From positions 62,001 to 126,000 of IMG/VR virus record IMGVR_UViG_3300032288_004964: DNA of 64,000 nt. One strand, given 5' to 3'. The position numbers and the translations under genes were made by a program. The notes beneath the pieces were generated by a model. That model had not been told where the DNA came from, searched no databases, and saw nothing but the letters and a program-made list of their open reading frames with translations. Positions 19,791 through 56,137 of the stretch are shown piece by piece; positions within the stretch are counted from its first letter, which is position 1, and each line of letters opens with the position of its first letter.

Positions 19791-19994
19791 ATGAATTCAA
19801 TACATGTTACATCTAAAACAAGTTCTATTAGAGCTACTTGGACTCGTGAATTATCAGAGGATTTGAATATGTATCATGGGTTGGATTTTGAAGATGAGCT
19901 ATCTCAAATTCTAAAGAAAGAACTACTAAAAGAAAGATGTAGTGATAGAAAAAAATCTATTAATAAAATTTTCAAACTACAAAAAACATCATAG
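19791..19994 (+). CDS. Mini-protein: major capsid (gp23-like) fragment plus basic tag
   Basis: VTSKTSSIRATWTRELSEDLNMYHGLDFEDELSQIL matches the gp23 block VxAKxRxLKAxWxxELAQDLxAxHGLDAExEL..IL. Confidence 0.65.
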   Translation: MNSIHVTSKTSSIRATWTRELSEDLNMYHGLDFEDELSQILKKELLKERCSDRKKSINKIFKLQKTS

Positions 19995-20014
19995 TAAATT
20001 TTGATATAAATACT

Positions 20015-21253
20015 ATGAATGTACTCAGTGTTGTTAATTACTCTAAAATAAATCCCAATATATCAGTTATTAAATCTAAACTAGAAAACAAAAACAATAG
20101 TTTACAATTTCTTCCTCAAATTTTAGATAATTTATCAAAAGATAAAAACTTTAATTATAAAAATCAAAAATTAAAATCAGCTTATGCAATAGATATTGTT
20201 CATAATTTGATTTTAAAATATTATTTCAAAAAAGAAAATAAATTTCATTTACTAGCAACTATTCTTAAAGAGAAGTATGGTTATCTTTATAACTACTACA
20301 TTGATTACTTAATTGAGAGAAATATTATATTACTTCTTTCAAATCACCAGAAAGGTAAAAGTTCAAGAGTGTATTCGATAAATGAATCAGTTCTTAGAGG
20401 CAAAATCACAAGATATAATAATAAAGACAAAGTACTCCTAAAGAAGTATAAATCTAAAGTATCTCAAATAGAAGAAAATGATATTGAAAGTTCTTTAATA
20501 GATGTTGATATTAAAAGAAAACTAGTTAGTGATTTATTTGGTATTCAAATAGAATTTGATAGGTCAATTTTCTATTTAGATAGTCTTAAAAATGAAGATA
20601 TGGATATTTATAATAGAAATAAATATTCAGTAGAATGTGTTAAAGAAGGTCATATATTTTATCACTTTGATAATTATGGCAGAATGCACACTAACTTTAC
20701 TATACTTAAGGCTTTTATTAGAAAGAATTGTTTATTAATTGATGGTGAAGAAACTTGTGAAATGGATATTAAAAATAGTCAGCCTCTTTTCTTATCAAAA
20801 TTAATACAAGATAGTAATACAAAGTGGGTTGATAAAGATGAATTTGAGTTATTCAAGAGTCTAACTATTAACGGTAACTTCTATCAATATATTATGGATA
20901 ACATTAAAACAAAAGATAGAGGTATGGTTAAAGAATTAACATATAAAGTTCTCTTTGGTAGAAATGGTGCTACTAGCAAAGCTGATAAGATATTTATTAG
21001 TTTATTTCCCACAATACATAACTTTATTAAGTTATATAAAAAAGATCATAATGATTATAAAATATTAGCCTATGATTTACAAAAAGCTGAATCTAGTTTA
21101 ATATTCAATAAGATAATTAGACAAGTTATGAACTTATATCCAGATATTAAGATTGTTACAGTTCATGATAGTATAATTGTACCTAAAAAAAATAAAGAAG
21201 AGGTTTTGGCTATTTTTCAAACTAAACTTTATGAAGAATTCGGATTAATATAG
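20015..21253 (+). CDS. Minimal family-A polymerase-like protein
   Basis: GRMHT, motif A DIKNSQP, motif B R..VK...Y.VLFG, LQKAES, motif C VHDS. Confidence 0.6.
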   Translation: MNVLSVVNYSKINPNISVIKSKLENKNNSLQFLPQILDNLSKDKNFNYKNQKLKSAYAIDIVHNLILKYYFKKENKFHLLATILKEKYGYLYNYYIDYLIERNIILLLSNHQKGKSSRVYSINESVLRGKITRYNNKDKVLLKKYKSKVSQIEENDIESSLIDVDIKRKLVSDLFGIQIEFDRSIFYLDSLKNEDMDIYNRNKYSVECVKEGHIFYHFDNYGRMHTNFTILKAFIRKNCLLIDGEETCEMDIKNSQPLFLSKLIQDSNTKWVDKDEFELFKSLTINGNFYQYIMDNIKTKDRGMVKELTYKVLFGRNGATSKADKIFISLFPTIHNFIKLYKKDHNDYKILAYDLQKAESSLIFNKIIRQVMNLYPDIKIVTVHDSIIVPKKNKEEVLAIFQTKLYEEFGLI

Positions 21254-21254
21254 T

Positions 21255-22211
21255 ATGAAAAAGATTTTATTTCTATGTGCTCAACCAGATGTACCTTATT
21301 TTCATTGGCAGGTTGAGGTTATGATTCATAACTTTATGAAAGTTGGAATAAATCCAAATCATATTGAGATTTTATTTTCATATGATTCATCTCCATCTAA
21401 TCAAGGCAGAGAACTAGCCAGTAGATATCCTTATGTTAGATTCTTCTTTTACAAAAGAACAATTTTAGATAATGGTGGTTATATACCTATACTTAGACCA
21501 GATATCATAGAACAACATTTTATGAGTTATCCAGAGTTATCTAATGAAACTATTTTTTATCATGATTCGGATATTGTATTCAGAGAACTTCCAGATTTTA
21601 ATTCTATGAATAATGATGATATATGGTACCTAAGTGATACTATATCTTATATATGTGCTGATTATATAAAATCTAAATCAACTGAATTATTTATTGAGAT
21701 GTGTAGAATATCCGATATTGATCCTCAATTAGTAGAATCAAATAATTCTAATTCAGGTGGTGCTCAGTATCTAATGAAAGGTGTTGATTCTGAATATTGG
21801 AGAGAAGTTAAAGAAAAGGCTTTAGCTTTATATAAATATATGTCTAATAGAGAAAACATTGAAAGAAGGTCATTAACACCTGAAAAACTAGTTAATTATA
21901 ATCCTATACAAAAATGGTGTGCTGATATGTGGGCTGTCCTATGGATGTCTCTAAAAAGAGGAAATAAAGTTCAAATATCCAAAGAGTTAAATTTTAGTTG
22001 GGGAACATCACCAATTTCCGATTATAATTCATGTAAGATATTTCATAATGCTGGTGTTACAACATCTAGTGGTGGTTTATTTTATAAAGGCGAGTTTATT
22101 AATAAGAATCCATTTGAAGAGGATCTTTCCTTTGTTAAAAAAGACACCGCATCTTTTAAATATGTAGAGGCAATTTTATATGCTAAAGATATGAGAAATA
22201 AGCCTTTATAG
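21255..22211 (+). CDS. GT-A glycosyltransferase resembling peptidyl O-glycosyltransferases
   Basis: YFHWQ, Y.P.LRP, DSD (DxD), GGAQY, WCADMWA. Confidence 0.6.
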   Translation: MKKILFLCAQPDVPYFHWQVEVMIHNFMKVGINPNHIEILFSYDSSPSNQGRELASRYPYVRFFFYKRTILDNGGYIPILRPDIIEQHFMSYPELSNETIFYHDSDIVFRELPDFNSMNNDDIWYLSDTISYICADYIKSKSTELFIEMCRISDIDPQLVESNNSNSGGAQYLMKGVDSEYWREVKEKALALYKYMSNRENIERRSLTPEKLVNYNPIQKWCADMWAVLWMSLKRGNKVQISKELNFSWGTSPISDYNSCKIFHNAGVTTSSGGLFYKGEFINKNPFEEDLSFVKKDTASFKYVEAILYAKDMRNKPL

Positions 22212-22235
22212 TTTTTTAAATAAATATATACCTTT

Positions 22236-22385
22236 GTGAAAAGGTTTTATCTAAAATATAAACATGAGACTATAAATGTAGTTGATTTGAATACTTTAGA
22301 AGAAGCTATTTCCTATTTCAGTAAGATAAAAAAATTATCTGTAAGTAATTTGTTGAAAATCTATATTGTCACAGACCAACATTAG
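22236..22385 (+). CDS. Small 49-aa protein (not in ORF track)
   Basis: GTG start after AAATATATA; MKRFYLKYKHETINVVDLNTLEEAISYFSKIKKL... Confidence 0.5.
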   Translation: MKRFYLKYKHETINVVDLNTLEEAISYFSKIKKLSVSNLLKIYIVTDQH

Positions 22386-22403
22386 ACTTTTAATATATAC
22401 ATA

Positions 22404-22940
22404 ATGAATCTTCAAGGTCAAAATATATCTTATGTTATTTTATCATCCGATAGATTAGATGATATGATTTCTATTCTTTATGCTAAAGAATATCAAGTAA
22501 TTCCGATTAAAGGATATTATAGGGGTCAATATGAGGATTCGGTTATGGCTTTTGGTATGGTTGATAATGATAATTTAAGAAAAGATGTTTTATTTTTATT
22601 AAATCATTTTCATCAGGATTGTGCGATTATAAAATACTTAGGTGAACCATCAGCTAGAAAGATTTTTAAAGATGGATCCGAAAAACCACTTGGTATAGTA
22701 ATGTATAATACCGATGCTGAGAATGTTTCTTACTTATACAATGGTCATTCATTCTCATTTATAGAACAAGTTAGATATTGGAAACCTACTAAGAAAGAAG
22801 ATTTCAGAGTGGGTATGATTGTTGAGTATTTTAATAAAGATAAATGGTATGAGAGATTAGTTGAGAATCCTCATGATGAGTATGAAAAACTTTATAAATT
22901 ACTTATAAAGTATGATAAAGTTAGAGTAGCCTCTAAATAA
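22404..22940 (+). CDS. Hypothetical protein
   Basis: G.Y.GQ.EDS, F.QDC motifs; AATATATA promoter. Confidence 0.6.
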   Translation: MNLQGQNISYVILSSDRLDDMISILYAKEYQVIPIKGYYRGQYEDSVMAFGMVDNDNLRKDVLFLLNHFHQDCAIIKYLGEPSARKIFKDGSEKPLGIVMYNTDAENVSYLYNGHSFSFIEQVRYWKPTKKEDFRVGMIVEYFNKDKWYERLVENPHDEYEKLYKLLIKYDKVRVASK

Positions 22941-23721
22941 TCTCAAACCACTTTATACACCTTTCCCAAGACCCTGGAGTTTCTGACATAAAATAAGTAG
23001 AATCACTTATATTATTAATAACATTTAAACCTATTTCTGGTTTATTTATATTTCTCATCAATATAACCTTTTTAGGATTAATCAAATGAGATGGTATGAT
23101 ATCAATTCCTGATATATTACCAGTTACTGTTGTTCCATTATTTTGAATAGTAAATGTATTACTTTTCAATAAATACATATAAACATCTAAACCAACCAAC
23201 ATTGAATTAGCTGGTCCTATTCTGCTATCCATAGCAATCATACTATTCAACATCATTATCTTAGATACTATTTTTCTAAAATTAGAATTATCATTATCAT
23301 AACTTGATAAAGTAGGATCATTCTTAATAGTGACATTCATACTTTGATTATTAGATGAAGTCATTGGATTTAAAGTCAATGATTCTAGCTTTTTTACTAT
23401 ATCATAATAAAGTGATTGATTATCTATCAGTTTTTGAGATTTAACAGTCAAACTTTTCATTTGAGTTGATACAGACATTATATAACTTTCTTCTTCTAAT
23501 CCCCATTCATTTGACTCTTTTTCATTATTCCATTCATCAACTTTATTCTCAAGAATTGCGTCAATTGTTAAATCTCTTCTTTTACTTTTCAGAATATTTT
23601 TATAATCTTCTGTGTCAGAATAAACATATTCTAAATAGTAAATAATCCCGCTAGGTAAAGATGGTTTTGAATTTTCTGAGTAATTACAGACTTTTTCTAA
23701 ATCATATCGAGTAACTGTCAT
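22933..23721 (-). CDS. Protein with major-capsid C-terminal-like segment
   Basis: KI...NSMIA..SRIGPANSMLVG...G.ISGI resembles gp23 N.IA..TRRG.gNf; also RRDLTIDAIL tag. Confidence 0.45.
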   Translation of the reverse strand: MTVTRYDLEKVCNYSENSKPSLPSGIIYYLEYVYSDTEDYKNILKSKRRDLTIDAILENKVDEWNNEKESNEWGLEEESYIMSVSTQMKSLTVKSQKLIDNQSLYYDIVKKLESLTLNPMTSSNNQSMNVTIKNDPTLSSYDNDNSNFRKIVSKIMMLNSMIAMDSRIGPANSMLVGLDVYMYLLKSNTFTIQNNGTTVTGNISGIDIIPSHLINPKKVILMRNINKPEIGLNVINNISDSTYFMSETPGSWERCIKWFEII

Positions 23722-24469: not shown

Positions 24470-24488
24470 TAATGATATTATTTTTTAA

Positions 24489-30155: not shown

Positions 30156-30560
30156 ATGAAAAAAACTATAGGCAGATGTGAAAAAATTTCACTTGTGGAT
30201 TTAGGATTAGATTCTAAGGCTAAAATAGACACAGGTGCTTATTCAACCGTTATTCATGTTGATGGTGTTAAAGTTATAGATAATAAATTGCAATTTTGGA
30301 TTGGTGATAAATCAAACAAATTTACTTTTTATGATTATAAAAAAATAACAGTAAGAAGTTCCTTTGGAAAAAAACAAAAAAGATACAGTATTTTAACTAG
30401 ATTAAAAGTAGGTAATAAAGTTTATAAAATTTATGTATCTTTAACAGATAGAAAAAAAATGAAATATCCAATATTAATAGGTAGAAGATTTCTCCATAAG
30501 TTTGGATATATTGTTGATGTAACAAAGAAAAATATTTATGATACCACTAAAAAGGTGTAA
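30156..30560 (+). CDS. Retropepsin-like aspartic protease (RimK-associated/DUF785 type)
   Basis: AKIDTGA, LTDR..MKYPILIGRRFL. Confidence 0.85.
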   Translation: MKKTIGRCEKISLVDLGLDSKAKIDTGAYSTVIHVDGVKVIDNKLQFWIGDKSNKFTFYDYKKITVRSSFGKKQKRYSILTRLKVGNKVYKIYVSLTDRKKMKYPILIGRRFLHKFGYIVDVTKKNIYDTTKKV

Positions 30561-31056
30561 TTATATCACCGGTGATAGTTCCTCAGTATCTTATGGATTA
30601 GATAAGATAATTAATTTTCTAGAATTAGAAGGTAAAAATATTATTGTTTTTTTCCCTAAACCAAAATCATATTACAATTCTCTTACTTATTTCGTGAATA
30701 ATAGAAAAGAGTATGATGGATTTGATAACCTAAAGTCATTCATAGAAACCGAAGGAACTCTTTTTAGAGTTAATTTAATAATTTTAGATATTTGGCATTT
30801 AAGAAATTTAAGTAAAGAATATATTGACTTAGTAAAATCAACAGGAATTGATTTTATATTAGTATCTAGAAATTATCATTATACTTCTTCAGAAGATGTT
30901 TGTGATTATCACATAAAAAGAGAATCTGTTTCACATAGAAATTCAGACCAATTTTTCATAACAGATAAACTAAATGGTTGGACTACCGATTTAGATGCTC
31001 TTAGAATATCATATATTAGAGATATTAAAATAAACAAATTATTTGACAAAGAATAG
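30538..31056 (+). CDS. Possible degenerate P-loop protein with RDxKI tag
   Basis: YITGDSSS, LIILD, C-terminal IRDIKINKLF. Confidence 0.45.
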   Translation: MIPLKRCNYITGDSSSVSYGLDKIINFLELEGKNIIVFFPKPKSYYNSLTYFVNNRKEYDGFDNLKSFIETEGTLFRVNLIILDIWHLRNLSKEYIDLVKSTGIDFILVSRNYHYTSSEDVCDYHIKRESVSHRNSDQFFITDKLNGWTTDLDALRISYIRDIKINKLFDKE

Positions 31057-31110: not shown

Positions 31111-32202
31111 ATGAGAATTAGAAAAAAGTTTTTAAAACTTACAAACTACACCTATCCACATGGAACAGAAGGATTTTTGAAAGGATTCCTACCTCAAGGA
31201 TATCAAGAAGATGGATATGGTAATTATTACTATCTAATCGGAGATAATCCATCTACAATGTTTACTTGTCACTTAGATACTGCTTGTAGAGAACAAGAAA
31301 GAGTAAAACATATTTTCAGTGGTAATATGATTATGACTGATGGTAAAACAATATTAGGAGCCGATGATAAAGCGGGAATGGTTGTTATTCTTAATATGAT
31401 TGAGAAAAAAGTACCAGGTCTCTATTTATTTTTTATAGGAGAAGAAGTTGGATGTATTGGCTCTGGTTTATTAGCTGATAATTGGAGTAAATTTCCACAT
31501 TCAAAATCTATAACTAAAGTAGTTTCATTTGACCGAAGAGGTACATCATCTGTTATTACTCATCAATTTTGGGGAAGATGTTGTTCAGATGAGTTTGGTA
31601 AGATATTAGCTGGTAGATTATCTTCAACAAGTGATAGATTAATGTTAGATATTGATGATACTGGTGTTATGACTGATTCTGCTAAGTTTATGAGATTAGT
31701 TCAAGAATGTACCAATATATCAGTTGGTTATTATAATGAACATACATTCAAAGAGTGTCAAAATATTGAGTATCTACAAATATTGTGTGATGCTGTTGTT
31801 CAAATTGATTGGGAAACCCTACCAATTGTTAGAAGTGTTGATGAAATTGATTTTGAAGAAGAAGATGAATATGATTATATTGACTCTGATGATTTTGAAA
31901 TGAAAGATGAGTATGAAGAAGAATTCTTTTCACACTTTAAGTATAAAGATGGTGTTAAGAAAATGTTTATTTCAAAAAGACATATTTCAAAAGAAAGATT
32001 AATTATTTGGAATTGGATTAATTCAAGATGTGAATATAGTGGTGTTAGTTCTTTTACTTGGAATGGAAACTCTCTTCATATTGATAATGAGTTTGTTGGT
32101 AATAGAATTGACCTAATAGATATGATTAGTCAATTATCATCTGTTCCTACATCTGAATTATCTCCAGTTCCTACAAGGATATCAAAAAAAATCCTGATGT
32201 AA
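31111..32202 (+). CDS. M28/M20-clan zinc peptidase
   Basis: CHLDT, GADDKAG, GEEVG, FDRRG, NISVGY.NEH. Confidence 0.85.
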   Translation: MRIRKKFLKLTNYTYPHGTEGFLKGFLPQGYQEDGYGNYYYLIGDNPSTMFTCHLDTACREQERVKHIFSGNMIMTDGKTILGADDKAGMVVILNMIEKKVPGLYLFFIGEEVGCIGSGLLADNWSKFPHSKSITKVVSFDRRGTSSVITHQFWGRCCSDEFGKILAGRLSSTSDRLMLDIDDTGVMTDSAKFMRLVQECTNISVGYYNEHTFKECQNIEYLQILCDAVVQIDWETLPIVRSVDEIDFEEEDEYDYIDSDDFEMKDEYEEEFFSHFKYKDGVKKMFISKRHISKERLIIWNWINSRCEYSGVSSFTWNGNSLHIDNEFVGNRIDLIDMISQLSSVPTSELSPVPTRISKKILM

Positions 32203-34583: not shown

Positions 34584-35078
34584 ATGTTTGGTAAAAATTT
34601 CAATATAGTTATAGGAGATAGAGCTTCTGGTAGAACTACATTTCTATTTGAGTTGGCTAGACTGATTAAAAGTTTTGATAAAAAAATATGTTATGTCGGT
34701 GGTACTGATGAATTCTTTGAATTTGCTAATAATTCAGTAGAAAGGATTTATGATTCAGCTTTTTTCTATAAAAATGACATTAGACTATTTCAAAATATAA
34801 AAGAAATAACCGAAAGAGATAATTATGAATACATATTTGTGGATGATATAGATTATATCTCACATGATTGTATAGATATATTAAGTAGTATTAGAATAAA
34901 TAAAATAGCTACTTGTTTAACTGATAATTTACCAATCTTTAATCAAGATATTAATTGTTATGAAATTAAAAGCGATAAAAATACACTTTTATTAAAAATC
35001 GGAGAAGAATTAGTAAAAACAAAAGATATAATAACTACTTTAAGTAGAGACCAAAAAATAAAATCAGTATTAAAATGA
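34584..35078 (+). CDS. Small P-loop-like protein with RDxKI tag
   Basis: GDRASGRTT (Walker A K to R), IFVDD, C-terminal RDQKIKSVL. Confidence 0.55.
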   Translation: MFGKNFNIVIGDRASGRTTFLFELARLIKSFDKKICYVGGTDEFFEFANNSVERIYDSAFFYKNDIRLFQNIKEITERDNYEYIFVDDIDYISHDCIDILSSIRINKIATCLTDNLPIFNQDINCYEIKSDKNTLLLKIGEELVKTKDIITTLSRDQKIKSVLK

Positions 35079-36138: not shown

Positions 36139-36630
36139 ATGAGTAATATAACATCAAATAATTATTTAGACAACATAGTTGAACTAATTAAATCAATAGA
36201 TACTACTGAGTTAACAGACATAGTTGACCAAACTGCTATGTCAAAAGTAACAGAAGAGCAAAAAGTTTACTTTTGGATTAGACTTTATCTTAAAGATGAT
36301 AATATTAATGCTGAGATTGGAGATGATATTAGCATTAATTGGAAACAATCAGGTGAAAAATTAGTAACTAAGTTTATTTGTTATGGTAAAAAAGGATTAA
36401 ATAAAGATTACAATGATCAAGTAACAAATTATAATTCAGAAGATGATAAAAAATGCCTTTGTTTAATGATTGATACTAAAATGGTTAATTTTAATGATGA
36501 TATTCCTTTTATTAGATCTTTATTTAAAACCGGATATCACTATAAATATCAATTGGTGAAAAGAGAAGATTTACAATTTATTATTGACAAAAATGGAATG
36601 ATTTTAGATTACTTTGATTGTGATTTTTAA
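36139..36630 (+). CDS. Hypothetical protein
   Basis: 163-aa ORF after thyA. Confidence 0.55.
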   Translation: MSNITSNNYLDNIVELIKSIDTTELTDIVDQTAMSKVTEEQKVYFWIRLYLKDDNINAEIGDDISINWKQSGEKLVTKFICYGKKGLNKDYNDQVTNYNSEDDKKCLCLMIDTKMVNFNDDIPFIRSLFKTGYHYKYQLVKREDLQFIIDKNGMILDYFDCDF

Positions 36631-38234
36631 GAACAATCTGGGCAATCTACATTACCACTTCCATCACAAGAATAGCACTCAACCTGGCCTCTTTCATCAC
36701 AGTCAACACAACCTAATTCACCATCACCATCACAGTCTTCACATTTTATATAACCATCTTTACATTCGGTGCATTCAACTTTTCCACTAGCTGAACATTC
36801 ATCGCAATCAGTTTCATTTCCTTCTTCATCTTCGACATGACCAGTTCCGTCACAGTTAGAACAATCTATTTCACCTGAGGCATCACAATTAGTACACTCA
36901 TGTTGTCCTTCTCCAGAACATTCATCACATCTTGTATTTCCTCTGCCATCACATTCTATACAATCTACTTCTCCATCTCCTCCACAATCATGGCATTCTA
37001 TTCTACCACGACCACCACAATACTCACAAGAACCATTACCACCGTCAGTTTCTTCTAAATTATACTCATAACTTCCGTCATTATAATTTGATAATTTTCC
37101 TGTATTAGGATTATAATTTTTGAATGTATCCATATAAGGATAGTAATTATAATCATAACTTGGTAATTCAATTACTATTTCTTGCTCATCTACTGGTTTT
37201 CCATTTAGTAAAAACTTTGTAGCTTCATTACTATCTTGTCTTTCTTTATATAAGAATTCATTCTTAATTGCATATTCTTTGAATAATGTTTCATCTGCCG
37301 AATTATTAGTATAGATTCTGTCCATTATTTTTCTACCTAATTTATCAGTCCATAAAAGAGCTCTTCCTGTTATAGATGTTCCATCTTTTTTATTCATCAA
37401 AACAATCATTGAAACTTTTTCTGGATTTCTAACATAGATATCTAAGAATTTTTGACATTTTTTATGTCTCATACAAGAATTGCCTAATGTCCCATCCATA
37501 CTTTCATAATTTTCAGAAGAATAAAAATCTCTAATTTCTTCACCAGATACTATTTTAAATCTTAAGAAAGCTTCTTTTCTTATTTGTATTATTGATTTGT
37601 ATTTATTAACAAATTCTTCAAGATCTTTATCACTTACTTTCACACCTGCCTTATCCAATATTCTTCTTGCGAATCTACCTACTCCGATTTCACTTTTAAC
37701 TAAATTATCTGTTTGATAATCTAATCCTTGATCACCCATTATAATTTCACCATCACCATCACTATCAGTGTATTTAAAATGAACTACTCTAAGACCATTT
37801 GCATATGTATTTCTCCAGTATGATTTATTTGTGTTGCTTAAAGATGCCATCTCATCAGCTGTTAGTTCTTTTACAATTTGACCTATAGCTCCATTTAGTG
37901 GAATTCTAACATTCTTTATTTCATATTCTCCGTTTTTTTCTAAATTCTCAGATAAAGTATCATATGAAGTTCCTGGATTTATAACTTTTACTTTTAATGA
38001 TTTTAATTTATTCTCAGGTATAAATTTTATCATATCTTCTCTGTCTTTATCTATATCAATGTAATTCGTATTAACATCTACTTCCTTACCATTTAAAGAT
38101 AGTAGTTTACTGGATAAATCTGAATTGATATCATTAAGAACATTCATAAAGTCCTTAGTGTATTTAATATTGGCTTCTAAAAGTAGTTCTAATTTACTTT
38201 CATTTATAAAGTCAATGTATCTGTTAATTTTCAT
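36627..38234 (-). CDS. Putative packaged protein (SCM/GRALxW/MDRIY family) with C-terminal CxxCxGxG zinc-finger array
   Basis: MKINRYIDFINES; LGNSCMR, GRALLW, MDRIY, YPYMDTF; about 11 DnaJ-like CxxCxGxG units. Confidence 0.6.
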   Translation of the reverse strand: MKINRYIDFINESKLELLLEANIKYTKDFMNVLNDINSDLSSKLLSLNGKEVDVNTNYIDIDKDREDMIKFIPENKLKSLKVKVINPGTSYDTLSENLEKNGEYEIKNVRIPLNGAIGQIVKELTADEMASLSNTNKSYWRNTYANGLRVVHFKYTDSDGDGEIIMGDQGLDYQTDNLVKSEIGVGRFARRILDKAGVKVSDKDLEEFVNKYKSIIQIRKEAFLRFKIVSGEEIRDFYSSENYESMDGTLGNSCMRHKKCQKFLDIYVRNPEKVSMIVLMNKKDGTSITGRALLWTDKLGRKIMDRIYTNNSADETLFKEYAIKNEFLYKERQDSNEATKFLLNGKPVDEQEIVIELPSYDYNYYPYMDTFKNYNPNTGKLSNYNDGSYEYNLEETDGGNGSCEYCGGRGRIECHDCGGDGEVDCIECDGRGNTRCDECSGEGQHECTNCDASGEIDCSNCDGTGHVEDEEGNETDCDECSASGKVECTECKDGYIKCEDCDGDGELGCVDCDERGQVECYSCDGSGNVDCPDCS

Positions 38235-38316: not shown

Positions 38317-40017
38317 ATGCTCGTAGAGACACAATATTTAAGTAATAGTAAGAAATTAGTAGTAAGTTATGTTGATAAATCCGGTGAAATCAAACTAAAA
38401 TACTACAATTGGGATAATCCAATGAAGTATATTTCTTGTGAGGATAATGATCCTCTAAAGCATCCTACATTTAGATCTTGGGATGGTAAGTCTGTTAAAC
38501 AAATAGAAGTTAGTCACCCAGATAGATACGCTATTTATGAGTTTTTAGATGACTTGCCTGAAGCAGAAAGAAATGAAATATTTGAATTTAATTTACCAAA
38601 AATATTTTTTATAGATATTGAAACTGAAATTGTTGATGGATTCCCAGAGGCGGCTGATGTTTTAGACCAACATGGTAATGTTACTAAAGAAGGAGCATCA
38701 ACTCAAGTTCTTTCTATATCAATTGTTTATGATGATAAAATCATTTTATTAGGTCTTAAGGATTTAAGTGAAGATGCTCAATTAAGAATAAAAAATAACA
38801 GTAACAAATACTTTGAAAAGTTTGGTGCTGATTATAAATTCAAATATATCAAGTATGATGATGAGTTTGATATGTTATATGCTTTCTTCTACAAGATGAT
38901 TCCAAAAATGCCTATACTAACCGGTTGGAACTTCCTTAAATATGACTGGTTATATTTAGTAAACCGTTCAAGAAAAATATCTAAGTGGACTAATGGTAAA
39001 GAATATAAAATTGATCCAGCAGTTTCTTCCCTAACAAAAAGATTAAATAAAATCTGGTCAACTGATTTTGAAGTTCCTGCCCATAGAATGATATTTGACT
39101 ACATGCAATTGTATGAAGTTTGTGATACTTCTATTAAAGTAAAGGAATCATCAGGGTTGGACTTTGTGGCTAGTAAATTAGTAGGCGTTGAGAAAGTTAA
39201 ATATGTTAACTCAATTTATAAATTGAAAGAAGACTCTACTATTAACGGGTATTCTTTTAAAGAAGGTGACATTTGTAGAACAGAAGGAGATACTTATTAT
39301 ATGTATGTTGGTACTGAGAGAGTAATATTTACAAAAGAAAACTTTTCAAAGCATAAAAGTCTTTTCAAAGAAGTAAATGTTTCTAACCTACAGAAGTTAT
39401 ATGAAGAAGATTTTGAAATCTATATGTACTATAACGCGGTTGACTCGGTTTTAGTTCAAAAGATTCATGATGCTCGTAATTACATTTCAATTATTTATGC
39501 GATTTCATCATTGGCTAAGATAAGAATTGTTGATGTTGTTTCTCAAATGAATAACGCTCTTGGTTCATTAGCTATTACAGAAGGAGTTTTAAGAAATAGA
39601 TTCCGTGAGATGGATAATATTGTTCTTTTCCGTGATGAAAAAGGAGATGCTGAATCAACTATCGCTGGTGGGTGGGTAAAGGATCCTGTTGTTGGTATGA
39701 ATCAGTGGTGTGTTTGTTATGACTTTGCGTCACTATATCCAACAACACAAAGACAATTCTTTATAGCACCTGAAACATTTGTCGGTGTTCAAGATGAGAA
39801 AGATAAATCTAAATGTTCAAATGGTAGACCAATTGATTTGGATAAACATGTTTTATGTGTTAATGGTGTTGTTTTTGAGAAAAGAGTATCACCAACTTTA
39901 ACTATGTTAGAGGATGTTTATGCTGATAGAAAGAAGGCTAAGAAAGTGATGATGGATAAAAAAGAAGAATTGAAATCTATTATAGATGAGATTAAACAGT
40001 TAGAAGCAGAATTATAA
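38317..40017 (+). CDS. DNA polymerase B, N-terminal part (exonuclease plus motif A) of a split gene
   Basis: DIETE, TGWN...YD, YNAVD, GGWV, DFASLYP; ends in fingers helix without NSxYG or YGDTD. Confidence 0.85.
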   Translation: MLVETQYLSNSKKLVVSYVDKSGEIKLKYYNWDNPMKYISCEDNDPLKHPTFRSWDGKSVKQIEVSHPDRYAIYEFLDDLPEAERNEIFEFNLPKIFFIDIETEIVDGFPEAADVLDQHGNVTKEGASTQVLSISIVYDDKIILLGLKDLSEDAQLRIKNNSNKYFEKFGADYKFKYIKYDDEFDMLYAFFYKMIPKMPILTGWNFLKYDWLYLVNRSRKISKWTNGKEYKIDPAVSSLTKRLNKIWSTDFEVPAHRMIFDYMQLYEVCDTSIKVKESSGLDFVASKLVGVEKVKYVNSIYKLKEDSTINGYSFKEGDICRTEGDTYYMYVGTERVIFTKENFSKHKSLFKEVNVSNLQKLYEEDFEIYMYYNAVDSVLVQKIHDARNYISIIYAISSLAKIRIVDVVSQMNNALGSLAITEGVLRNRFREMDNIVLFRDEKGDAESTIAGGWVKDPVVGMNQWCVCYDFASLYPTTQRQFFIAPETFVGVQDEKDKSKCSNGRPIDLDKHVLCVNGVVFEKRVSPTLTMLEDVYADRKKAKKVMMDKKEELKSIIDEIKQLEAEL

Positions 40018-40947: not shown

Positions 40948-42615
40948 ATGTCATTAAAGAAAGACCTACTAAAATATAAGCCCAGAAAGGAACAGAAAGA
41001 AGCACTTGATTTCATTGATTCTGAATATCAAAAAAATAAATTGAATAAGTTTTTCTTACTTAATTTACCTGTTGGTTCAGGTAAAAGTCATTTAGCCTTA
41101 ATGATTGCTGATTGGTATAAAAAGAATGTTAACAAGATGGCTAGAGTTGATATTATCACTAATAGTAAGATTCTTCAAGATCAATATGCAAATACATATC
41201 AGTCAATATCTGATTTGAAAGGTAAAGAAAATTATGAATGTGAAACTTATGCTTGTTCTTGTGCACAAGGATCGGAATTTAATAGATTAAACAAAACTTC
41301 TTGTGAAAGTTGTCCTTATTCTTCAGCTAGAGAATCTTACCAAAGTGGTGGTATTTCTTTAACAAACTTTTATCTTTATATTCTTTATGCTATCTATAAT
41401 CCTAAGTTAATGGAAAGTAGAGATGCTAGAGTTTTAATTGTAGATGAAGCTCATGAATTTGATGATGTTATGTCTGACTTTATTACTATTAAAATCACAG
41501 AGACTTCACTTAAGAAATACAAATTTGCAAGTGAGTATGACCTAATTAAAAGATTAAAGGCTGTTAAATCTATTACTGATTATGTTGAGTTCTTAAAGCA
41601 CTATAATACTGAGATAATAAGCACTATGGATTCGATGGCAAATGGTATGGCTTCTGTGCCTAGAAATGTAACAGAAGATAAAAGAGATTTAAAGATATCT
41701 AAGCTATTGAAAACTAAAAATAGCGATGTTAAAATGATGCAGTTAATTACTGATTTAAAACAACAACAATCAAAAATTGATGTTTTCTTAACTGAATATA
41801 AAGCAAATCCTAACAACTGGGTACTTGAAACAAGTTATAATGAAAAGTTAAGACAGAAAGAATTATCATTGGAGCCAATCTGGGCATATGATTACTTAGA
41901 TAAGTATGTATTTAGTCATTATGATATGGTATTTCTGATGTCTGGTACTATCTTAGATAAGAATCTTTTCTGTCAACTAAACGGATTAGATGTTAGTAAG
42001 GCAGTTTACTATTCTATTTCTTCACCATTTCCACTTAGAAATAGAATGATATATTACATGCCAATAGGTAAGATGTCCTATAAGTCTAAAGAAGAAACAT
42101 TTAAGAAGTATATCCCTTATATTAAGAAGTTATTAGATAAGTATAAGGGTAAGAAAGGTATTATACATACTAACTCATTTGAATTAGCAAATTGGATAAA
42201 AGATTCTATTAAGGACTCAAGATTAATTTTTCATGACTCATCAAATAAAGATGAAATGTTAAGATTGCACATTGAATCAGAAGAACCAACTGTAATTGTT
42301 AGTCCTTCTATGGATACTGGTGTCAGTTTTGATAATGATTCTGCTAGATTTCAAATAATTGCTAAAGTTCCTTATCCAAGTTTAGCCTCACAAAAGAATA
42401 AAATGAGACAATCTAATAATCCTGATTGGTATTCTTGGAAAACAGTTTCGGGTTTTATTCAAATGACTGGTAGAGCTGTTCGTTCAGATATGGATTATGC
42501 AGATACAATAGTTATTGATGGGGGTTTTGGTGATGTGATAAAACACAGTTCACACTTTTTACCTGATTGGATTCAAGAAGCAATTAAGAAAATTAACATT
42601 AAGATAGAAGCATAA
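40948..42615 (+). CDS. DinG/XPD-like SF2 helicase
   Basis: PVGSGKS, Cys cluster, DEAH, MSGT, KVPYP, QMTGRAVR. Confidence 0.9.
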   Translation: MSLKKDLLKYKPRKEQKEALDFIDSEYQKNKLNKFFLLNLPVGSGKSHLALMIADWYKKNVNKMARVDIITNSKILQDQYANTYQSISDLKGKENYECETYACSCAQGSEFNRLNKTSCESCPYSSARESYQSGGISLTNFYLYILYAIYNPKLMESRDARVLIVDEAHEFDDVMSDFITIKITETSLKKYKFASEYDLIKRLKAVKSITDYVEFLKHYNTEIISTMDSMANGMASVPRNVTEDKRDLKISKLLKTKNSDVKMMQLITDLKQQQSKIDVFLTEYKANPNNWVLETSYNEKLRQKELSLEPIWAYDYLDKYVFSHYDMVFLMSGTILDKNLFCQLNGLDVSKAVYYSISSPFPLRNRMIYYMPIGKMSYKSKEETFKKYIPYIKKLLDKYKGKKGIIHTNSFELANWIKDSIKDSRLIFHDSSNKDEMLRLHIESEEPTVIVSPSMDTGVSFDNDSARFQIIAKVPYPSLASQKNKMRQSNNPDWYSWKTVSGFIQMTGRAVRSDMDYADTIVIDGGFGDVIKHSSHFLPDWIQEAIKKINIKIEA

Positions 42616-43108: not shown

Positions 43109-43180
43109 ATCGGCTATATTATTTTTATAAAGTATATATAAATGTTTTATTTTCATTTTGTTGATTTTAATATATACTTT

Positions 43181-44506
43181 ATGAAAATATTTAATTTTTT
43201 AGATTTTATTTTAGAAGCAAAAGAAGAATTACTTCTTCCTATTATAATATCTGAAGAATTTTATGAAAAACTTAACAGAATAGATTCACCAATTGCTAGT
43301 AAATTAAAAGCAATTAAAAAAGACAGACCGTTAGGTGAATATTCTTTTATATCCTCTGGTAGTTCTGAAGAAACTGTTAAATATACAGATACCTATAAGT
43401 TAGATAAGTATCTTAGAGATAAATATGATACTAGTATAGATTTTGATACATCTAAATATTTAAAAAGAGTTGTTGAGTGGGATCCATCGGATGGTATATG
43501 GAATGAAAATAGAACAGAAATTAGAATAGGTAGATTTATTAAAAGATTTTTTGGAACAGAATATACTGATGCTGAGATTGAAAAATTTGTTAATCAATGG
43601 AAGTCTTTAGAAGAAAACTCAACATTCGAATCATGGGAAGGTTGGAAGATTAAAGACGGATATAGGTCTAATAAGTACTTCTTTGCTGAGAATAGTTCTA
43701 ATCCTCTTATAAATTCTTGTATGAATGACCAAATTCATTTAGTAGAATTCTATCAATATTGTTCTTCTGCTAAATTACTTGTGCTTCTAGATGAAGATGG
43801 TTTGATATTAGGTAGAGCTTTAGTTTGGACTGATTATATGAATAGAGTAATAATGGATAGAGTTTATTATGCTTTAGATAAAGATTATCATAAATTTGTT
43901 GATTATGCTAAAAAGAATGGTTGGTTTTATAAAAAGAGAAATATAAGTGGAGGTTCACCATTTATTAAAGATGGTAAAGAAGTTTCTCTTAAAACTAAAG
44001 TAAGTGTTACTAATGTATTTAACTATCAAGATGAGTGTGAAGATTCCTTTCCATATATGGATACTTTTTATTATGCTCAAGGTGAGTGGTGTATGAATTA
44101 TGAGCCATCTAATGGTGAATATTATAAACTAAATGATACAGACGGTGCATTTGAACACCATAATAACTTATATGATGTTCACGGCCAATCAATATCTCAT
44201 GATATTGAGGATTATTATGTTCATTCTAATGAACAAGATGGTTTAATTTATAGAGATGATTCTATCTATGTTGATTATAGTGGAGGTCAAGGATTTAATG
44301 ATTACACATTTAGTGATTGGATTGAGAAGTCATACTTAGAAAATCCAAAGAATGGATTCGTAAAATCTGGAGAAGAATGGTATAATAAAAACCATTGTGT
44401 TTGGTCTGAGAAAGAAAAATCTTGGATTTATAGACCTGATGCTATTTGGGTTAAAAATGATTGGGTTAGTTGGGATAATTTTAACCCTGGTGGAAATAAT
44501 ATATAG
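43181..44506 (+). CDS. Paralog of 36627..38234 (putative packaged protein)
   Basis: MKIFNFLDFILEA; IGRF, EKFVN, NSCM, GRALVW, MDRVY, FPYMDTF. Confidence 0.65.
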   Translation: MKIFNFLDFILEAKEELLLPIIISEEFYEKLNRIDSPIASKLKAIKKDRPLGEYSFISSGSSEETVKYTDTYKLDKYLRDKYDTSIDFDTSKYLKRVVEWDPSDGIWNENRTEIRIGRFIKRFFGTEYTDAEIEKFVNQWKSLEENSTFESWEGWKIKDGYRSNKYFFAENSSNPLINSCMNDQIHLVEFYQYCSSAKLLVLLDEDGLILGRALVWTDYMNRVIMDRVYYALDKDYHKFVDYAKKNGWFYKKRNISGGSPFIKDGKEVSLKTKVSVTNVFNYQDECEDSFPYMDTFYYAQGEWCMNYEPSNGEYYKLNDTDGAFEHHNNLYDVHGQSISHDIEDYYVHSNEQDGLIYRDDSIYVDYSGGQGFNDYTFSDWIEKSYLENPKNGFVKSGEEWYNKNHCVWSEKEKSWIYRPDAIWVKNDWVSWDNFNPGGNNI

Positions 44507-50881: not shown

Positions 50882-50888
50882 AAATTAT

Positions 50889-50929
50889 AAAAGACCAGAT
50901 TAACATATGTTACTCTGGTCTTTTTTTTT
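50889..50929 (+). terminator. Strong intrinsic terminator between the ncRNA and the Ro60 gene
   Basis: AAAAGACCAGA-TTAACATATGTTAC-TCTGGTC followed by a long T tract. Confidence 0.85.
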
Positions 50930-50965
50930 GTAATTAAATTAAAATTAAAAATTAAAATATAGATT

Positions 50966-52417: not shown

Positions 52418-52448
52418 AAAAAACCCACTCATTGAGTGGGTTTTTTTT
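52416..52448. terminator. Bidirectional intrinsic terminator
   Basis: AAAAAAACCCACTCA-t-TGAGTGGGTTTTTTT. Confidence 0.9.
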
Positions 52449-54035: not shown

Positions 54036-54050
54036 AGAGTATATATTAAA

Positions 54051-54818: not shown

Positions 54819-54883
54819 ATTTAAATAATATTTTATTATTATATATTATTTCAATGAGGTTATGTTCATCTAATATATACATA

Positions 54884-55612
54884 ATGATAATTAATGATGA
54901 TTGTTTCAATTATATTACCACAATCCCTTCAAATTCAATTGATTTGGTGTTAGTAGATCCACCCTATCTTATATCTCGTTCATCTGGATTTACAAACTAT
55001 TCTGATGATGCTAATGATGATATGAAGACTAAATATGGTCAATTATCTATTGATTTTGGTGATTGGGATAAATCAGAAATTGATTGGAATAAATTATTTT
55101 CAGAATATTATAGAGTCCTTAAAAAAGGAGGAACTGTTATTTTCTTTTATGATATATGGAAATCAAATGAGATTAAAGAAGCAGCTGAATTAAGTAAGTT
55201 TAAACAACCAAGAGTTTGTCAGTGGCAGAAAACAAATCCTGTTCCTGTTAATTCTAAACTTAATTACTTGTCCAATGCCATAGAGTATTTCTTTACATTT
55301 GTTAAGAGTGGTAAACCTACTTTTAACTCTGAGTATGATAATGGTGTTTATAGATATCCGATTTGTCATGGTAAAGAAAGATCTGAACATCCGACTCAAA
55401 AGCCTTTAAGTTTAATATCTGACTTAGTTAAGAAACACTCTAATCCTGGTGATGTTGTGTTGGATACATTTGCTGGATCTGGAACTACTGGACACGCTTG
55501 TATTTTAAATGATAGAAAGTACATATTGATAGAGAAAGAGGAAAAATATTTTGAAATAATAAAACATAGATTAAAAAATCTATCAACAAATAGTAATTTT
55601 AGTAATATATAA
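54884..55612 (+). CDS. Orphan N6-A/N4-C DNA methyltransferase (beta class)
   Basis: DPPY ... HPTQKP ... VLDTFAGSGTT. Confidence 0.92.
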   Translation: MIINDDCFNYITTIPSNSIDLVLVDPPYLISRSSGFTNYSDDANDDMKTKYGQLSIDFGDWDKSEIDWNKLFSEYYRVLKKGGTVIFFYDIWKSNEIKEAAELSKFKQPRVCQWQKTNPVPVNSKLNYLSNAIEYFFTFVKSGKPTFNSEYDNGVYRYPICHGKERSEHPTQKPLSLISDLVKKHSNPGDVVLDTFAGSGTTGHACILNDRKYILIEKEEKYFEIIKHRLKNLSTNSNFSNI

Positions 55613-55631
55613 AAATAAAATATTAATTAAT

Positions 55632-56033
55632 ATGAGTATAATAGTAAAAAATTCACAACTTAATAATGAAACGGTTGAGGCTTTGAATATTTTAATTGAT
55701 TTAGATATAAATGCAACAGCTGCTTTTAGATTAACAAGAATAATTAAAGAATTGTCATCTATTGTTGATGATAAATTAAAAATGGAGAAAAGGATTCTTG
55801 ATAAATGGATTGAAAAAGATGAATTAGGTAACCCAGTTAGACCTAAAGATGAGACTGGTAATGTAGTTGAAGGAGCTGTTAATGTTACCAATGTTGAAGA
55901 ATTTACTAAAGAAATGAAGTCTCTTATGGAAATTGAGAATGAAATTTCTTATGATAAAATTAAGTTTGAAGAATTAAATTTAACAACTGCTAAGGTTAAA
56001 GATTTAATGAAACTAGAATTCTTATTTGATTAA
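55632..56033 (+). CDS. Hypothetical helical protein (possible fibre chaperone)
   Basis: 133-aa ORF just before the fibre genes. Confidence 0.5.
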   Translation: MSIIVKNSQLNNETVEALNILIDLDINATAAFRLTRIIKELSSIVDDKLKMEKRILDKWIEKDELGNPVRPKDETGNVVEGAVNVTNVEEFTKEMKSLMEIENEISYDKIKFEELNLTTAKVKDLMKLEFLFD

Positions 56034-56035
56034 CT

Positions 56036-56137
56036 ATGCCATTTCCACATTATAACATATATCTCAGTTCTATTCTAAAAAGAAATAGAAGAAGGAAATT
56101 TATTGAAAAATTATTTTCTAAAAAGTCTGATAAGTAA
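56036..56137 (+). CDS. 33-aa mini-protein: tail-tube-like N-terminus plus basic tag (not in ORF track)
   Basis: MPFPHYNIYLSSILKRNRRRKFIEKLFSKKSDK; ATG 2 nt after the upstream stop. Confidence 0.45.
   Translation: MPFPHYNIYLSSILKRNRRRKFIEKLFSKKSDK

What the first reader, a model, noticed from the sequence alone, without database searches (positions are those of the whole stretch)
19791..56137. Family of 'core-protein fragment plus R-x-x-x-I-x-x-(L/I/V) tag' genes
Five otherwise unrelated ORFs carry a similar short basic amphipathic helix: RKKSINKIF (19791, capsid fragment), RDLTIDAIL (22933, capsid-like), RDIKINKLF (30538) and RDQKIKSVL (34584) (both degenerate P-loop-like), and RRKFIEKLF (56036, tube-like N-terminus). 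Each partner resembles a broken copy of an essential phage protein. Inference: the tag is a docking or localisation signal that displays decoys or adaptors on a common scaffold, protease or membrane. This could be an undescribed counter-defence or sorting system.
Basis: inference. Interest (0 to 1): 0.7.

Follow-up and report, generated by a model that had tools for sequence, protein, structure and literature searches.

The report
Shared sorting tag on phage proteins
A group of very large freshwater phages puts the same nine-residue peptide, which copies a helix from the capsid protein's removable leader, on the end of 10-15% of their small, otherwise unrelated proteins; it most likely works as an address label that loads them into the virus head.

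Summary
All five peptides are at the stated coordinates. In the 385-kb phage contig, RxxxIxx[LIV][FL] lies within the last 20 residues of 25 ORFs, against 0.65 expected. A looser form tags 47 of 458 ORFs here, 136 of 936 in LR745206 and 94 of 925 in LR756504. LR756501 has its own variant; LR756500 and Lak-B5 have none.

Selection acts on the protein. Every six-frame hit lies in an ORF near its stop, synonymous codons follow genome usage, and the flanks are not conserved. Orthologues that are only 31-65% identical keep the tag. Carriers share nothing else and are almost all under 250 aa.

"Broken core protein" fits only a minority: mini-ORFs made from pieces of capsid, portal, protease, scaffold and sheath proteins. 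ORF 22933 is not broken. It is a complete small HK97-fold protein, and its internal copy of the motif aligns in register with the propeptide helix of T4-like gp23 (R..I.A.ILENQE). Internal copies are often followed by Glu, which gives the T4 prohead-protease site I-L-E.

Best reading (about 45%): a capsid-targeting sequence like that of the T4 internal proteins, but mostly C-terminal and used on a very large scale. The main rival is a client or degron tag for the phage's own Hsp100/DnaK machinery. The receptor was not identified.

The parts
19791..19994 (+). 67-aa mini-ORF: gp23 (major capsid protein) spine-helix fragment plus C-terminal tag
   Evidence: Pfam Gp23 E 1.5e-8, HMM positions 139-185. 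PHROG major head protein. An orthologue in LR745206 keeps the tag. The ORF stays open in a diverged strain, with 4 synonymous and 4 non-synonymous changes and none in the tag.
19947..19973 (+). tag RKKSINKIF (aa 53-61)
22933..23721 (-). 262-aa complete compact HK97-fold capsid-protein paralogue with a propeptide-like N-terminal region
   Evidence: Pfam Gp23 23.5 bits. AF2 pLDDT 84.4. The top PDB folds are all phage capsid proteins, including HK97 and T4 gp23/gp24, E about 1e-7. 81 homologues.
23551..23577 (-). internal copy of the motif, RDLTIDAIL (aa 49-57), followed by E-N
   Evidence: R49, L51, I53 and D54 are invariant in 24 homologues down to 33% identity. The motif aligns in register with the gp23 propeptide helix of Aeh1, Astolliot and C48C1.
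30538..31056 (+). 172-aa ORFan with a C-terminal tag
   Evidence: No Pfam or PHROG hit. Orthologues in LR756502 and LR745206 keep the tag (RDKKIDGII, RDKKINDIF) at 38% overall identity.
31018..31044 (+). tag RDIKINKLF (aa 161-169)
34584..35078 (+). 164-aa RecA/KaiC-like P-loop protein (Walker A GDRASGRTT) with a C-terminal tag
   Evidence: AF2 pLDDT 77.6; fold matches RadA and KaiC with TM about 0.55-0.6. Weak TK and AAA hits.
35046..35072 (+). tag RDQKIKSVL (aa 155-163), a flexible terminal helix
   Evidence: R155, K158, L163 and K164 are invariant in 12 homologues down to 32% identity. pLDDT is below 50 for residues 151-164, and the short helix 157-163 is not packed on the domain.
56036..56137 (+). 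33-aa mini-ORF; its N-terminus resembles the tail-tube N-terminus (MP.PH[FY]) and it ends in a tag
   Evidence: MP.PH[FY] occurs only here and at the tube protein in six frames of the contig. A 35-aa orthologue in LR745206 has the tag RKDKIKNIF. This is weak evidence for the tube relation.
56090..56116 (+). tag RRKFIEKLF (aa 19-27)
56124..56152 (+). intrinsic-terminator hairpin plus T-run that holds the mini-ORF's stop codon in its loop
   Evidence: Read directly from the sequence. The same arrangement occurs at other tagged ORFs at operon ends.
41683..41709 (+). internal motif RDLKISKLL in the 555-aa Fe-S (XPD/DinG-like) helicase; uncertain whether it is a functional tag
   Evidence: Matrix score 18.9. 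Conserved at the same position in LR756502.

Best explanation
The motif R-[DNK]-x-K-[IL]-x-x-[IL]-[LF] is a short helical sorting peptide, read at the protein level. I commit to this function: it is a capsid-targeting sequence, working like the T4 internal-protein CTS. It copies the conserved helix of the T4-type capsid-protein propeptide. That should let any protein carrying it dock to the prohead scaffolding core, be enclosed in the head and, presumably, be injected with the DNA.

There are two layouts:
- N-terminal or internal copies are followed by Glu. This makes an I-L-E site for the gp21-type prohead protease, so the copy acts as a classic cleavable propeptide.
- The much commoner copies sit 0-7 residues from the C-terminus of small (under 250 aa), fast-evolving ORFans, and of mini-proteins made from pieces of head and tail proteins.

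Shown: the tag exists, is selected as protein, is flexible and terminal, is clade-wide with a consensus that differs between lineages, and resembles the propeptide helix. Inferred: binding to the core, encapsidation and ejection.

Confidence that this is a genuine shared sorting or docking peptide is about 0.9. Confidence in the capsid-targeting function is about 0.45, and that is the figure given below.
For: 1. Enrichment and position.
2. Selection at the protein level. Codon use at R0, D/N1, K3, I4 and L/F8 equals genome usage (p > 0.1, n = 128). There are no hits in non-coding frames and the flanks are unconserved.
3. Carriers are unrelated outside the tag. Of 23 orthologue pairs, 19 keep it at 31-65% body identity. 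It is invariant in homologues of 34584.
4. The tag is an unpacked terminal helix.
5. The internal copy in the HK97-fold paralogue 22933 is its most conserved N-terminal segment. MAFFT places it in register with the gp23 propeptide helix of Aeh1 (RKDIVARIFENQ), Astolliot (RQGIIAQILENQ) and C48C1, and the Arg is the only invariant column. hhalign puts the C-terminal tag profile on that same helix, E 0.006.
6. Glu follows the motif in 5 of 15 internal copies and in 0 of about 32 C-terminal ones (counted by hand). This gives L/I-x-E, the T4 gp21 cleavage motif (PMC9026906).
7. The phage has a gp21-type protease fused to a repeat scaffold, next to the MCP and portal genes.
8. Precedent: T-even internal proteins are diverse defence proteins that share only a CTS, which encapsidates them into the scaffolding core (PMC3012670). 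Alt and gp21 have C-terminal propeptides (PMC9026906).
9. Tagged mini-ORFs derive from MCP, portal, protease, scaffold repeats and sheath.
10. There is a strict size limit: in ORFs over 250 aa the tag occurs 0 times in 150 in this contig and once in 211 in LR745206.
Against: - There are no virion proteomics, and binding was not shown. The one co-folding job (scaffold repeats against a tagged protein) gave no answer.
- Tagged genes lie preferentially in operons behind Bacteroidota-type TAnnTTTG promoters, which look early (12 of 35 against 89 of 483, p 0.02). They are depleted behind the AATATATA motif that precedes head and tail genes.
- 47-136 cargo species per genome is far more than any known phage head holds.
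- The phage's own main MCP has a diverged helix (RAEWMAEYAEF) rather than the tag consensus.
- The hhalign probability is low (6%) for such a short profile.
- Tagged protein bodies are not basic, unlike the T4 IPs.
Confidence: 0.45

Rival explanations
1. Proteostasis tag. The C-terminal peptide marks clients for the phage's own chaperone and unfoldase set (Hsp100/Clp-like ATPase, DnaK, DnaJ-like, ClpS). It would act as a degron or timer for early proteins and for potentially dominant-negative fragments of assembly proteins, or as a chaperone-recruitment signal.
For: - The phage encodes a 711-aa double-AAA+ Hsp100 without an N-domain, a bona fide DnaK (966 bits), a truncated DnaJ and a ClpS.
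- The Hsp100 is found in all five tag-positive genomes and is missing in LR756500, Lak-B5 and three T4-like phages. DnaK follows the same pattern where checked.
- The Hsp100 and the J-protein sit in early-type operons next to tagged genes.
- The tag is terminal, flexible and confined to small proteins.
- The N-terminal extension of ClpS contains a tag-core-like V-D-x-I-L-S-K that is conserved in LR745206.
Against: - The co-occurrence is confounded by phylogeny: there is only one close tag-negative genome.
- The contig has no ClpP.
- Known degrons lack an invariant Arg plus a helical i, i+4, i+7/8 pattern.
- Acidic residues in the core are poor for DnaK binding (my own knowledge).
- It does not explain the in-register match to the capsid propeptide helix, or the I-L-E after internal copies.
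Confidence: 0.17
2. Decoys or assembly poisons, the first reader's idea, restricted to the mini-ORFs. Fragments of capsid, portal, protease, scaffold and sheath proteins, brought to a common site by the tag, would interfere with co-infecting relatives or satellites, or soak up host sensors that recognise these proteins.
For: - Three back-to-back mini-ORFs (MCP, protease and portal pieces) lie in a non-structural operon.
- The fragments are only 27-50% identical to the resident full-length genes.
- The ORFs are kept open across diverged genomes and strains.
- Host defence systems are known to sense capsid, portal, terminase and tube proteins (my own knowledge).
Against: - It covers only about a fifth of the carriers.
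- There is no evidence of a target.
- It is compatible with, rather than an alternative to, capsid targeting.
- MCP-like pieces also occur inside larger ORFs in LR756501.
Confidence: 0.12
3. Docking motif for a replication or transcription hub, for example a PIP-like sliding-clamp peptide.
For: The spacing [DN]-x-K-I-x-x-I-[LF] mimics the PIP box Q-x-x-[ILM]-x-x-[FY]-[FY], and T4 clamp binders use C-terminal tails (my own knowledge). A clamp loader is present.
Against: - The clade's own DNA polymerase (the C-terminal half, in LR745206) ends in MDIFGGFK. That is the classical T4-type clamp tail and is unlike the tag.
- No clamp was detected.
- 10-15% of ORFs is too many.
Confidence: 0.05
4. Not a protein signal. 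It would be a DNA or RNA element at gene ends (promoter, translation-coupling site, recombination site), a compositional artefact of Lys/Ile-rich proteins, or the conserved end of one paralogous family.
For: The genome is 28.7% GC, so the tag is A-rich. Many tagged ORFs overlap the next start codon or a terminator.
Against: - Shuffles that keep composition give 0.65 against 25 observed.
- All six-frame hits are in-frame in ORFs.
- Synonymous codon use is as in the rest of the genome, except for ATA at position 7.
- There is no flank conservation.
- BLAST finds no similarity among the carrier bodies.
Confidence: 0.02

Closest known systems
Capsid targeting sequence (CTS) of the T4 internal proteins IPI-III, and the propeptides of T4 head proteins (PMC3012670, PMC9026906)
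   Same: A short conserved peptide is the only thing shared by small, diverse, fast-evolving proteins. It targets them to the scaffolding core. There is a link to the gp21-type protease motif L/I-x-E, seen here after internal copies. The phage is T4-related, with a gp21-like protease, a scaffold and a gp23-like MCP.
   Different: Here the tag is mostly C-terminal rather than N-terminal. Its sequence resembles the MCP propeptide helix (R..I.A.ILENQ), not the IP CTS. It is used on 47-136 ORFs per genome instead of a handful. Encapsidation is not shown.
C-terminal capsid-interior docking peptides: encapsulin cargo-loading peptides, the HK97 protease C-terminal targeting tail, and the P22 and 80alpha/SaPI scaffold C-terminal helices
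   Same: A short C-terminal peptide or helix docks cargo or scaffold to the inside of an HK97-fold shell and can be transplanted.
   Different: Different sequences; one or a few cargo proteins per system; no relation to a capsid propeptide helix has been reported.
ssrA/SspB-type C-terminal degrons and adaptor-docking tails for AAA+ unfoldases
   Same: A terminal, flexible, transplantable tag. The phage encodes Hsp100 and ClpS.
   Different: Those degrons are co-translationally added or unique to one protein, end in non-polar residues, and have no helical Arg...Ile..Ile-Leu signature. No ClpP was found here.
T4-type clamp-binding C-terminal tails (polymerase gp43, gp33, gp55)
   Same: C-terminal hydrophobic peptides shared by several unrelated proteins that dock to one hub.
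   Different: This clade's polymerase carries its own distinct ...MDIFGGFK tail, so the tag is a different signal.

Membership tests
T4-type capsid targeting sequence / head-protein propeptide system | A short conserved peptide is the only similarity among otherwise unrelated small proteins | tested here: met
   No BLAST similarity among 32 carrier bodies except one pair. The tag is enriched 30-40-fold at C-termini.
T4-type capsid targeting sequence / head-protein propeptide system | N-terminal position, removed by the gp21 protease after L/I-x-E | tested here: not met
   About 85-90% of copies lie 0-7 residues from the C-terminus. Only the minority of internal or N-terminal copies are followed by Glu (I-L-E; 5 of 15, hand count).
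T4-type capsid targeting sequence / head-protein propeptide system | The phage has a gp21-type prohead protease, a scaffolding core and a gp23-type shell | tested here: met
   Protease-scaffold fusion: phrog_207 E 3.5e-31 and PF03420 E 5.6e-4. MCP: PF07068, 97 bits. 14-residue scaffold repeats.
T4-type capsid targeting sequence / head-protein propeptide system | The peptide binds the scaffolding core | tested here: inconclusive
   Co-folding of the scaffold repeats with a tagged 70-aa protein gave 'no answer', score 0.00. This is not evidence either way.
T4-type capsid targeting sequence / head-protein propeptide system | Carriers are present in virions and are ejected | not testable with these tools
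   The phage is uncultured and known only from freshwater metagenomes. No RNA or protein data were found.
Gp23 major capsid protein family (PF07068): ORF 19791 | Pfam score above the gathering threshold | tested here: met
   34.9 bits against a 24.4-bit cut-off, but it covers only HMM positions 139-185 of 376, so it is a fragment.
Gp23 / HK97-fold capsid proteins: ORF 22933 | HK97 fold and family-level sequence match | tested here: met
   The Pfam score is just under the cut-off (23.5 against 24.4). The AF2 model (pLDDT 84) matches only phage capsid proteins at the top of the PDB search, E 1e-7, including T4 gp23/gp24.
C-terminal ssrA-like degron | Non-polar extreme C-terminus (LAA-like) recognised by ClpX or ClpA | tested here: not met
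   The tag is usually followed by K, N, S or D, or by 2-7 further polar residues. Recognition could not be tested.
T4-type or PIP-type sliding-clamp binding motif | Same motif as the C-terminal tail of the phage's own DNA polymerase | tested here: not met
   The polymerase C-half in LR745206 ends ...SVVMDIFGGFK, which is of the T4/C48C1 type (..LEDFFG).
MinD/FtsA-type membrane-targeting amphipathic helix | Broad hydrophobic face, net positive charge, little residue-specific conservation | tested here: not met
   There are only three aliphatic positions. Arg is invariant, D/N and K are strongly preferred, and acidic residues are frequent at positions 1, 5 and 6.

The most novel reading that the evidence does not exclude
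Huge phages of this clade use one transplantable C-terminal 'zip code', evolved from the capsid protein's own propeptide helix. With it they load a library of 50-140 different small effector proteins (10-15% of their genes) and mini-fragments of virion proteins into the head for co-injection. This would be an arsenal-delivery system an order of magnitude larger than the T4 internal-protein system. The tag consensus differs between lineages, which suggests co-evolution with its receptor.
Probability: 0.35. Interest if true: 0.88.

Novelty: new variant of a known kind. Interest (0 to 1): 0.78.

Why it matters
- It would give a function-level handle on about a tenth of the 'dark' ORFans of the largest known phages, as packaged and probably injected effectors, from sequence alone.
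- It would show how a capsid propeptide helix can be copied onto other proteins as a portable address label.
- It would offer a nine-residue tag for loading foreign proteins into large capsids.
- If the receptor turns out to be the phage chaperone/unfoldase set instead, it would be the first proteome-wide phage-encoded degron or client code.
- Either way, the tag is a simple sequence marker for sorting huge-phage proteomes and for tracing this clade in metagenomes.

Tried and rejected
- **Chance or composition:** rejected by shuffles.
- **DNA or RNA element:** rejected by frame-locking, codon usage and unconserved flanks.
- **Paralogy of carriers:** rejected. ORFs 30538 and 34584 show no similarity.
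- **Sliding clamp as receptor:** gp45, DnaN and PCNA-type Pfam models and a jackhmmer search seeded with C48C1 gp45 found no clamp. The polymerase tail is of a different type.
- **Co-folding of scaffold repeats (2 copies) with a tagged 70-aa protein:** no answer, controls not run. This is not evidence for or against binding.
- **My by-eye readings of two mini-ORFs:** ORF 84518 as a PolB motif-B fragment is marginal (z 2.0, p about 0.05). ORF 145366 as a TerL Walker-A fragment is not supported (z 1.0). Both.
- **Function from carrier domains:** Pfam on ten of the largest tagged proteins of LR745206 gave nothing. ESM Atlas on the tag region gave nothing.
- **Literature:** searches for a described motif found none.
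- **My first claim that LR756504 and LR756501 lack the tag:** wrong. It rested on a matrix and a DNA pattern trained on this genome, and the unbiased search corrected it.
- **J-domain proteins:** present in all five relatives, so not informative.
- **Population variation from lake metagenome contigs:** too little divergence to test selection on the tag.
- **Caveat on counts:** my ORF caller is crude (ATG starts only, greedy longest-first), so all counts are approximate.

Full report
**What the window is.** The window is bases 62,001-126,000 of a single 385,333-bp IMG/VR virus contig with 28.7% GC. It carries T4-type genes: a gp23-like MCP, a gp21-like protease fused to a scaffold, portal, sheath, tube, clamp loader, DnaB, RNR and thymidylate synthase. 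Its nearest public relatives are the 'huge phages' LR756502 (642 kb) and LR745206 (635 kb), with DnaB 84% identical. LR756504, LR756501 (735 kb), LR756500 and the Lak phages are more distant. Near-identical DNA occurs in freshwater, lake, plankton and groundwater metagenomes, and no RNA runs were found. The contig is probably incomplete. It holds only the N-terminal half of a split family-B DNA polymerase; in LR745206 the other half lies 100 kb away.

**The observation.** All five peptides are present as described, but the copy in ORF 22933 is internal (aa 49-57 of 262). Across the contig:
- RxxxIxx[LIV][FL] occurs 38 times in 483 ORFs against 9.8 expected from per-protein shuffles.
- Within the last 20 residues it occurs 25 times against 0.65 expected. 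None of 300 shuffles reached either value.
- A position matrix gives the consensus R-[DN(K)]-x-K-[IL]-[DEKN]-[KQN]-I-[LF]. It finds 44 hits at score 14 or more against 0.45 in shuffles.
- Most copies sit 0-2 residues before the stop codon, a few sit 3-7 before it, and about ten are internal.
- An unbiased scan for any three-residue gapped pattern enriched in the last 14 residues returns R...I..I, R..K...I, R..KI and RD..I as the top patterns.

**Protein, not nucleic acid.** Four results point the same way:
- In a six-frame scan, all 50 matrix hits lie in open frames and about 43 lie within 12 residues of the stop. The six hits that my ORF caller missed are further small ORFs.
- DNA flanks on both sides are unconserved.
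- Over 128 tags from two genomes, synonymous codon usage at R0, D/N1, K3, I4 and L/F8 does not differ from genome-wide usage (p > 0.1). Only Ile7 shows an excess of ATA.
- Some C-terminal extensions (..KNPLN..SKKSDK) are simply the left arm of the operon's terminator hairpin.

**Carriers.**
- The bodies of 32 carriers share no BLAST similarity, except two gp23-fragment mini-ORFs.
- Carriers are small: 15-20% of ORFs of 60-100 aa and 11-13% of ORFs of 100-150 aa carry the tag. Among ORFs over 250 aa it is found in 0 of 150 here and 1 of 211 in LR745206.
- Ten of the largest tagged proteins have no significant Pfam domain; one has a weak sub-threshold PolyA_pol hit, E 0.0018.
- Of 23 tagged proteins with a homologue in LR745206, 19 keep a strong tag and two a variant, although the bodies are only 31-65% identical.
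- In 12 homologues of ORF 34584, down to 32% identity, R155, K158, L163 and K164 are invariant.
- AlphaFold2 models ORF 34584 as a RecA/KaiC-like P-loop domain. The tag forms a short terminal helix with pLDDT below 50, not packed on the domain.

**Phylogenetic spread.** Counts use the relaxed pattern R...[IL]..[ILVM][ILFMV] in the last 16 residues.

| Genome | Tagged ORFs | Expected | Notes |
|---|---|---|---|
| This contig | 47 of 458 | 1.6 | |
| LR745206 | 136 of 936 | 3.7 | |
| LR756504 | 94 of 925 | 3.5 | consensus shifted to R-K-x-[KI]-I-x-x-L-L at the very end |
| LR756501 (first 400 kb) | 11 of 538 | 1.3 | variant ..KN.[KR]-R-T-K-L-[IM]-D-x-M-L-N |
| LR756500 (first 400 kb) | 3 of 544 | 1.5 | at background |

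A 41-kb Lak-B5 sample and a 50-kb sample of the T4-like phage C48C1 are also at background. The consensus therefore drifts between lineages. That is what a signal co-evolving with a receptor would do.

**The 'core-protein fragment' part.** It is true for a subset.
- ORF 19791 matches Pfam Gp23 positions 139-185 (E 1.5e-8). The contig has four to five further gp23 pieces besides the full MCP.
- Three back-to-back mini-ORFs lie on the minus strand at window 280282-280796. They are an MCP piece, a prohead-protease piece and a portal C-terminal piece, and each ends in R-K-x-K-I-K-x-[ILM]-F.
- Other examples are a sheath N-terminus, a second protease piece, an MCP C-terminal piece, and three scaffold repeats at E 1e-37 in LR745206. 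LR756504 has an MCP N-terminal piece.
- Two calls I made by eye, PolB and TerL, are not statistically supported.
- These mini-ORFs are about a fifth of all carriers. Their orthologues keep both the open frame and the tag.

**The key link.** ORF 22933 is not broken. It has 81 homologues of constant length. Its AlphaFold2 model has pLDDT 84, and the best PDB matches are all phage capsid proteins, including HK97 and T4 gp23/gp24.

Its internal motif is the most conserved part of its N-terminal region: K45, R49, L51, I53 and D54 are invariant. MAFFT aligns this region in register with the propeptide of T4-like major capsid proteins. The segment RDLTIDAILENK lies over RKDIVARIFENQ (Aeh1), RQGIIAQILENQ (Astolliot) and RKAVTAAILENQ (C48C1), and the Arg is the only invariant column. 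A profile of twelve C-terminal tags aligns to exactly that helix by hhalign (E 0.006 for this single comparison, though the probability is low for so short a profile).

Internal or N-terminal copies of the motif are followed by Glu in 5 of 15 cases, against 0 of about 32 C-terminal copies (hand count). Further ..ILEN.. cases occur in LR745206. The resulting I-L-E is the L/I-x-E cleavage motif of the T4 prohead protease (PMC9026906).

[quoted passage not shown] That CTS is a 10-19-residue propeptide, and Alt and gp21 also have C-terminal propeptides (PMC9026906). The simplest model that covers all the observations is that the tag is such a targeting sequence. It would be derived from the capsid-protein propeptide helix and placed mostly at the C-terminus of small accessory proteins.

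I put this at about 45%. The difficulties are these:
- No binding or virion data exist.
- The single co-folding job gave no answer.
- Tagged genes are enriched in operons with Bacteroidota-type TAnnTTTG promoters, and depleted behind the AATATATA motif found upstream of the head and tail genes.
- The number of putative cargo species is unprecedented.

**Rivals.**
- The phage encodes an Hsp100 ATPase, DnaK, a J-protein and ClpS.
- The Hsp100 was found in every tag-positive genome and in none of the tag-negative genomes examined. DnaK was checked in fewer genomes and follows the same pattern.
- The N-terminal extension of ClpS carries a tag-core-like V-D-x-I-L-S-K.
- A client or degron code therefore remains plausible (about 17%). 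It does not explain the propeptide match, and the co-occurrence is confounded by phylogeny.
- A clamp-binding role is unlikely, because the polymerase carries its own T4-type tail.
- The decoy idea may hold for the mini-ORFs and is compatible with targeting.

**Verdict.** This is a genuine, strongly selected, clade-wide sorting peptide. It is a new variant of the T4 capsid-targeting principle if my model is right, and something more novel if it is not. The receptor was not identified.

Noticed in passing
LR756500.1 (loci L129-L148), e.g. record positions 11706-15907, 197835-199532, 313382, 331856: The tag-negative relative has its own C-terminal motif. About 15 proteins of 160-370 aa end in ..(K)YEHL.NADDFGF[FL]DN. 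It resembles T4-type clamp-binding tails (DFxF/FG). It may be a paralogous family or a different shared tag.
   Followed up: partly
window 38317-40017; LR745206 232797-234344 (+) and 130568-131998 (-): The family-B DNA polymerase is split after motif A into two genes about 100 kb apart on opposite strands. The C-terminal half (motif B onward, ending MDIFGGFK) is absent from this contig. The contig is therefore probably incomplete, despite CheckV's 95% estimate.
   Followed up: partly
genome 32744-34882 (-), i.e. upstream of the window (locus L016): The prohead protease is fused to a scaffold that holds about ten tandem 14-residue repeats (YSEYIAENLDKNIA), followed by a very acidic stretch. Just after the protease domain sits a tag-like ESKINELFN that lacks the Arg.
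   Followed up: partly
whole contig; e.g. window 56168-56180 upstream of 56201: Two upstream motif classes. AATATATA(C) lies 5-30 nt before the start codon in 79 of 198 intergenic regions (3.5 expected), including upstream of the MCP, protease, portal and tube genes. TA..TTTG, a Bacteroidota -7-like box, lies upstream of operons of small genes. They look like late and early promoters respectively.
   Followed up: partly
genome 332913-334802, 196109-196816, 285157-287292, 48848-49132, 235740-236348, 343565-344122: The phage encodes a full DnaK, a truncated DnaJ (J-domain plus zinc finger), an N-domain-less Hsp100, ClpS, an ECF-type sigma factor and a NusG-like protein. It also encodes Sir2, LigA, MgtC and class-I aminoacyl-tRNA synthetases.
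   Followed up: partly
window 56201-58585 and 58627-61611: Two paralogous tail-fibre-like proteins start MP[SA]TYSIN and carry R-L-x-T-I-x-x-V-L-N-L-L-P-D-N at aa 17-31. This is a motif-like N-terminal segment shared with an LR745206 homologue. The second protein has long P-T-T-T-T-T linkers.
   Followed up: no
window 36627-38234 and 43142-44506: Two paralogues share a ..YPYMDTF.. core. The first ends in a long run of CxxCxGxG zinc-finger repeats of the DnaJ type.
   Followed up: no
window 30156-30560 and 31111-32202: A retropepsin-like 'ATP-dependent zinc protease' domain protein (PF05618, E 1.6e-17) overlaps the start of tagged ORF 30538. A 363-aa ORF follows it, which looks like a metallopeptidase to me, by eye only.
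   Followed up: no
LR756501.1 517537-517779, 145855-146025, 276453-276566: Gp23-like segments also occur in this more distant relative, but inside larger open frames of 482, 182 and 196 aa.
   Followed up: no
LR745206 296091-296213; LR756502 320871-321047: Short open frames (100 and 79 aa) resemble residues 277-335 of the Hsp100 ATPase. If real, fragment mini-ORFs are not limited to virion proteins. I did not check whether they carry the tag.
   Followed up: no
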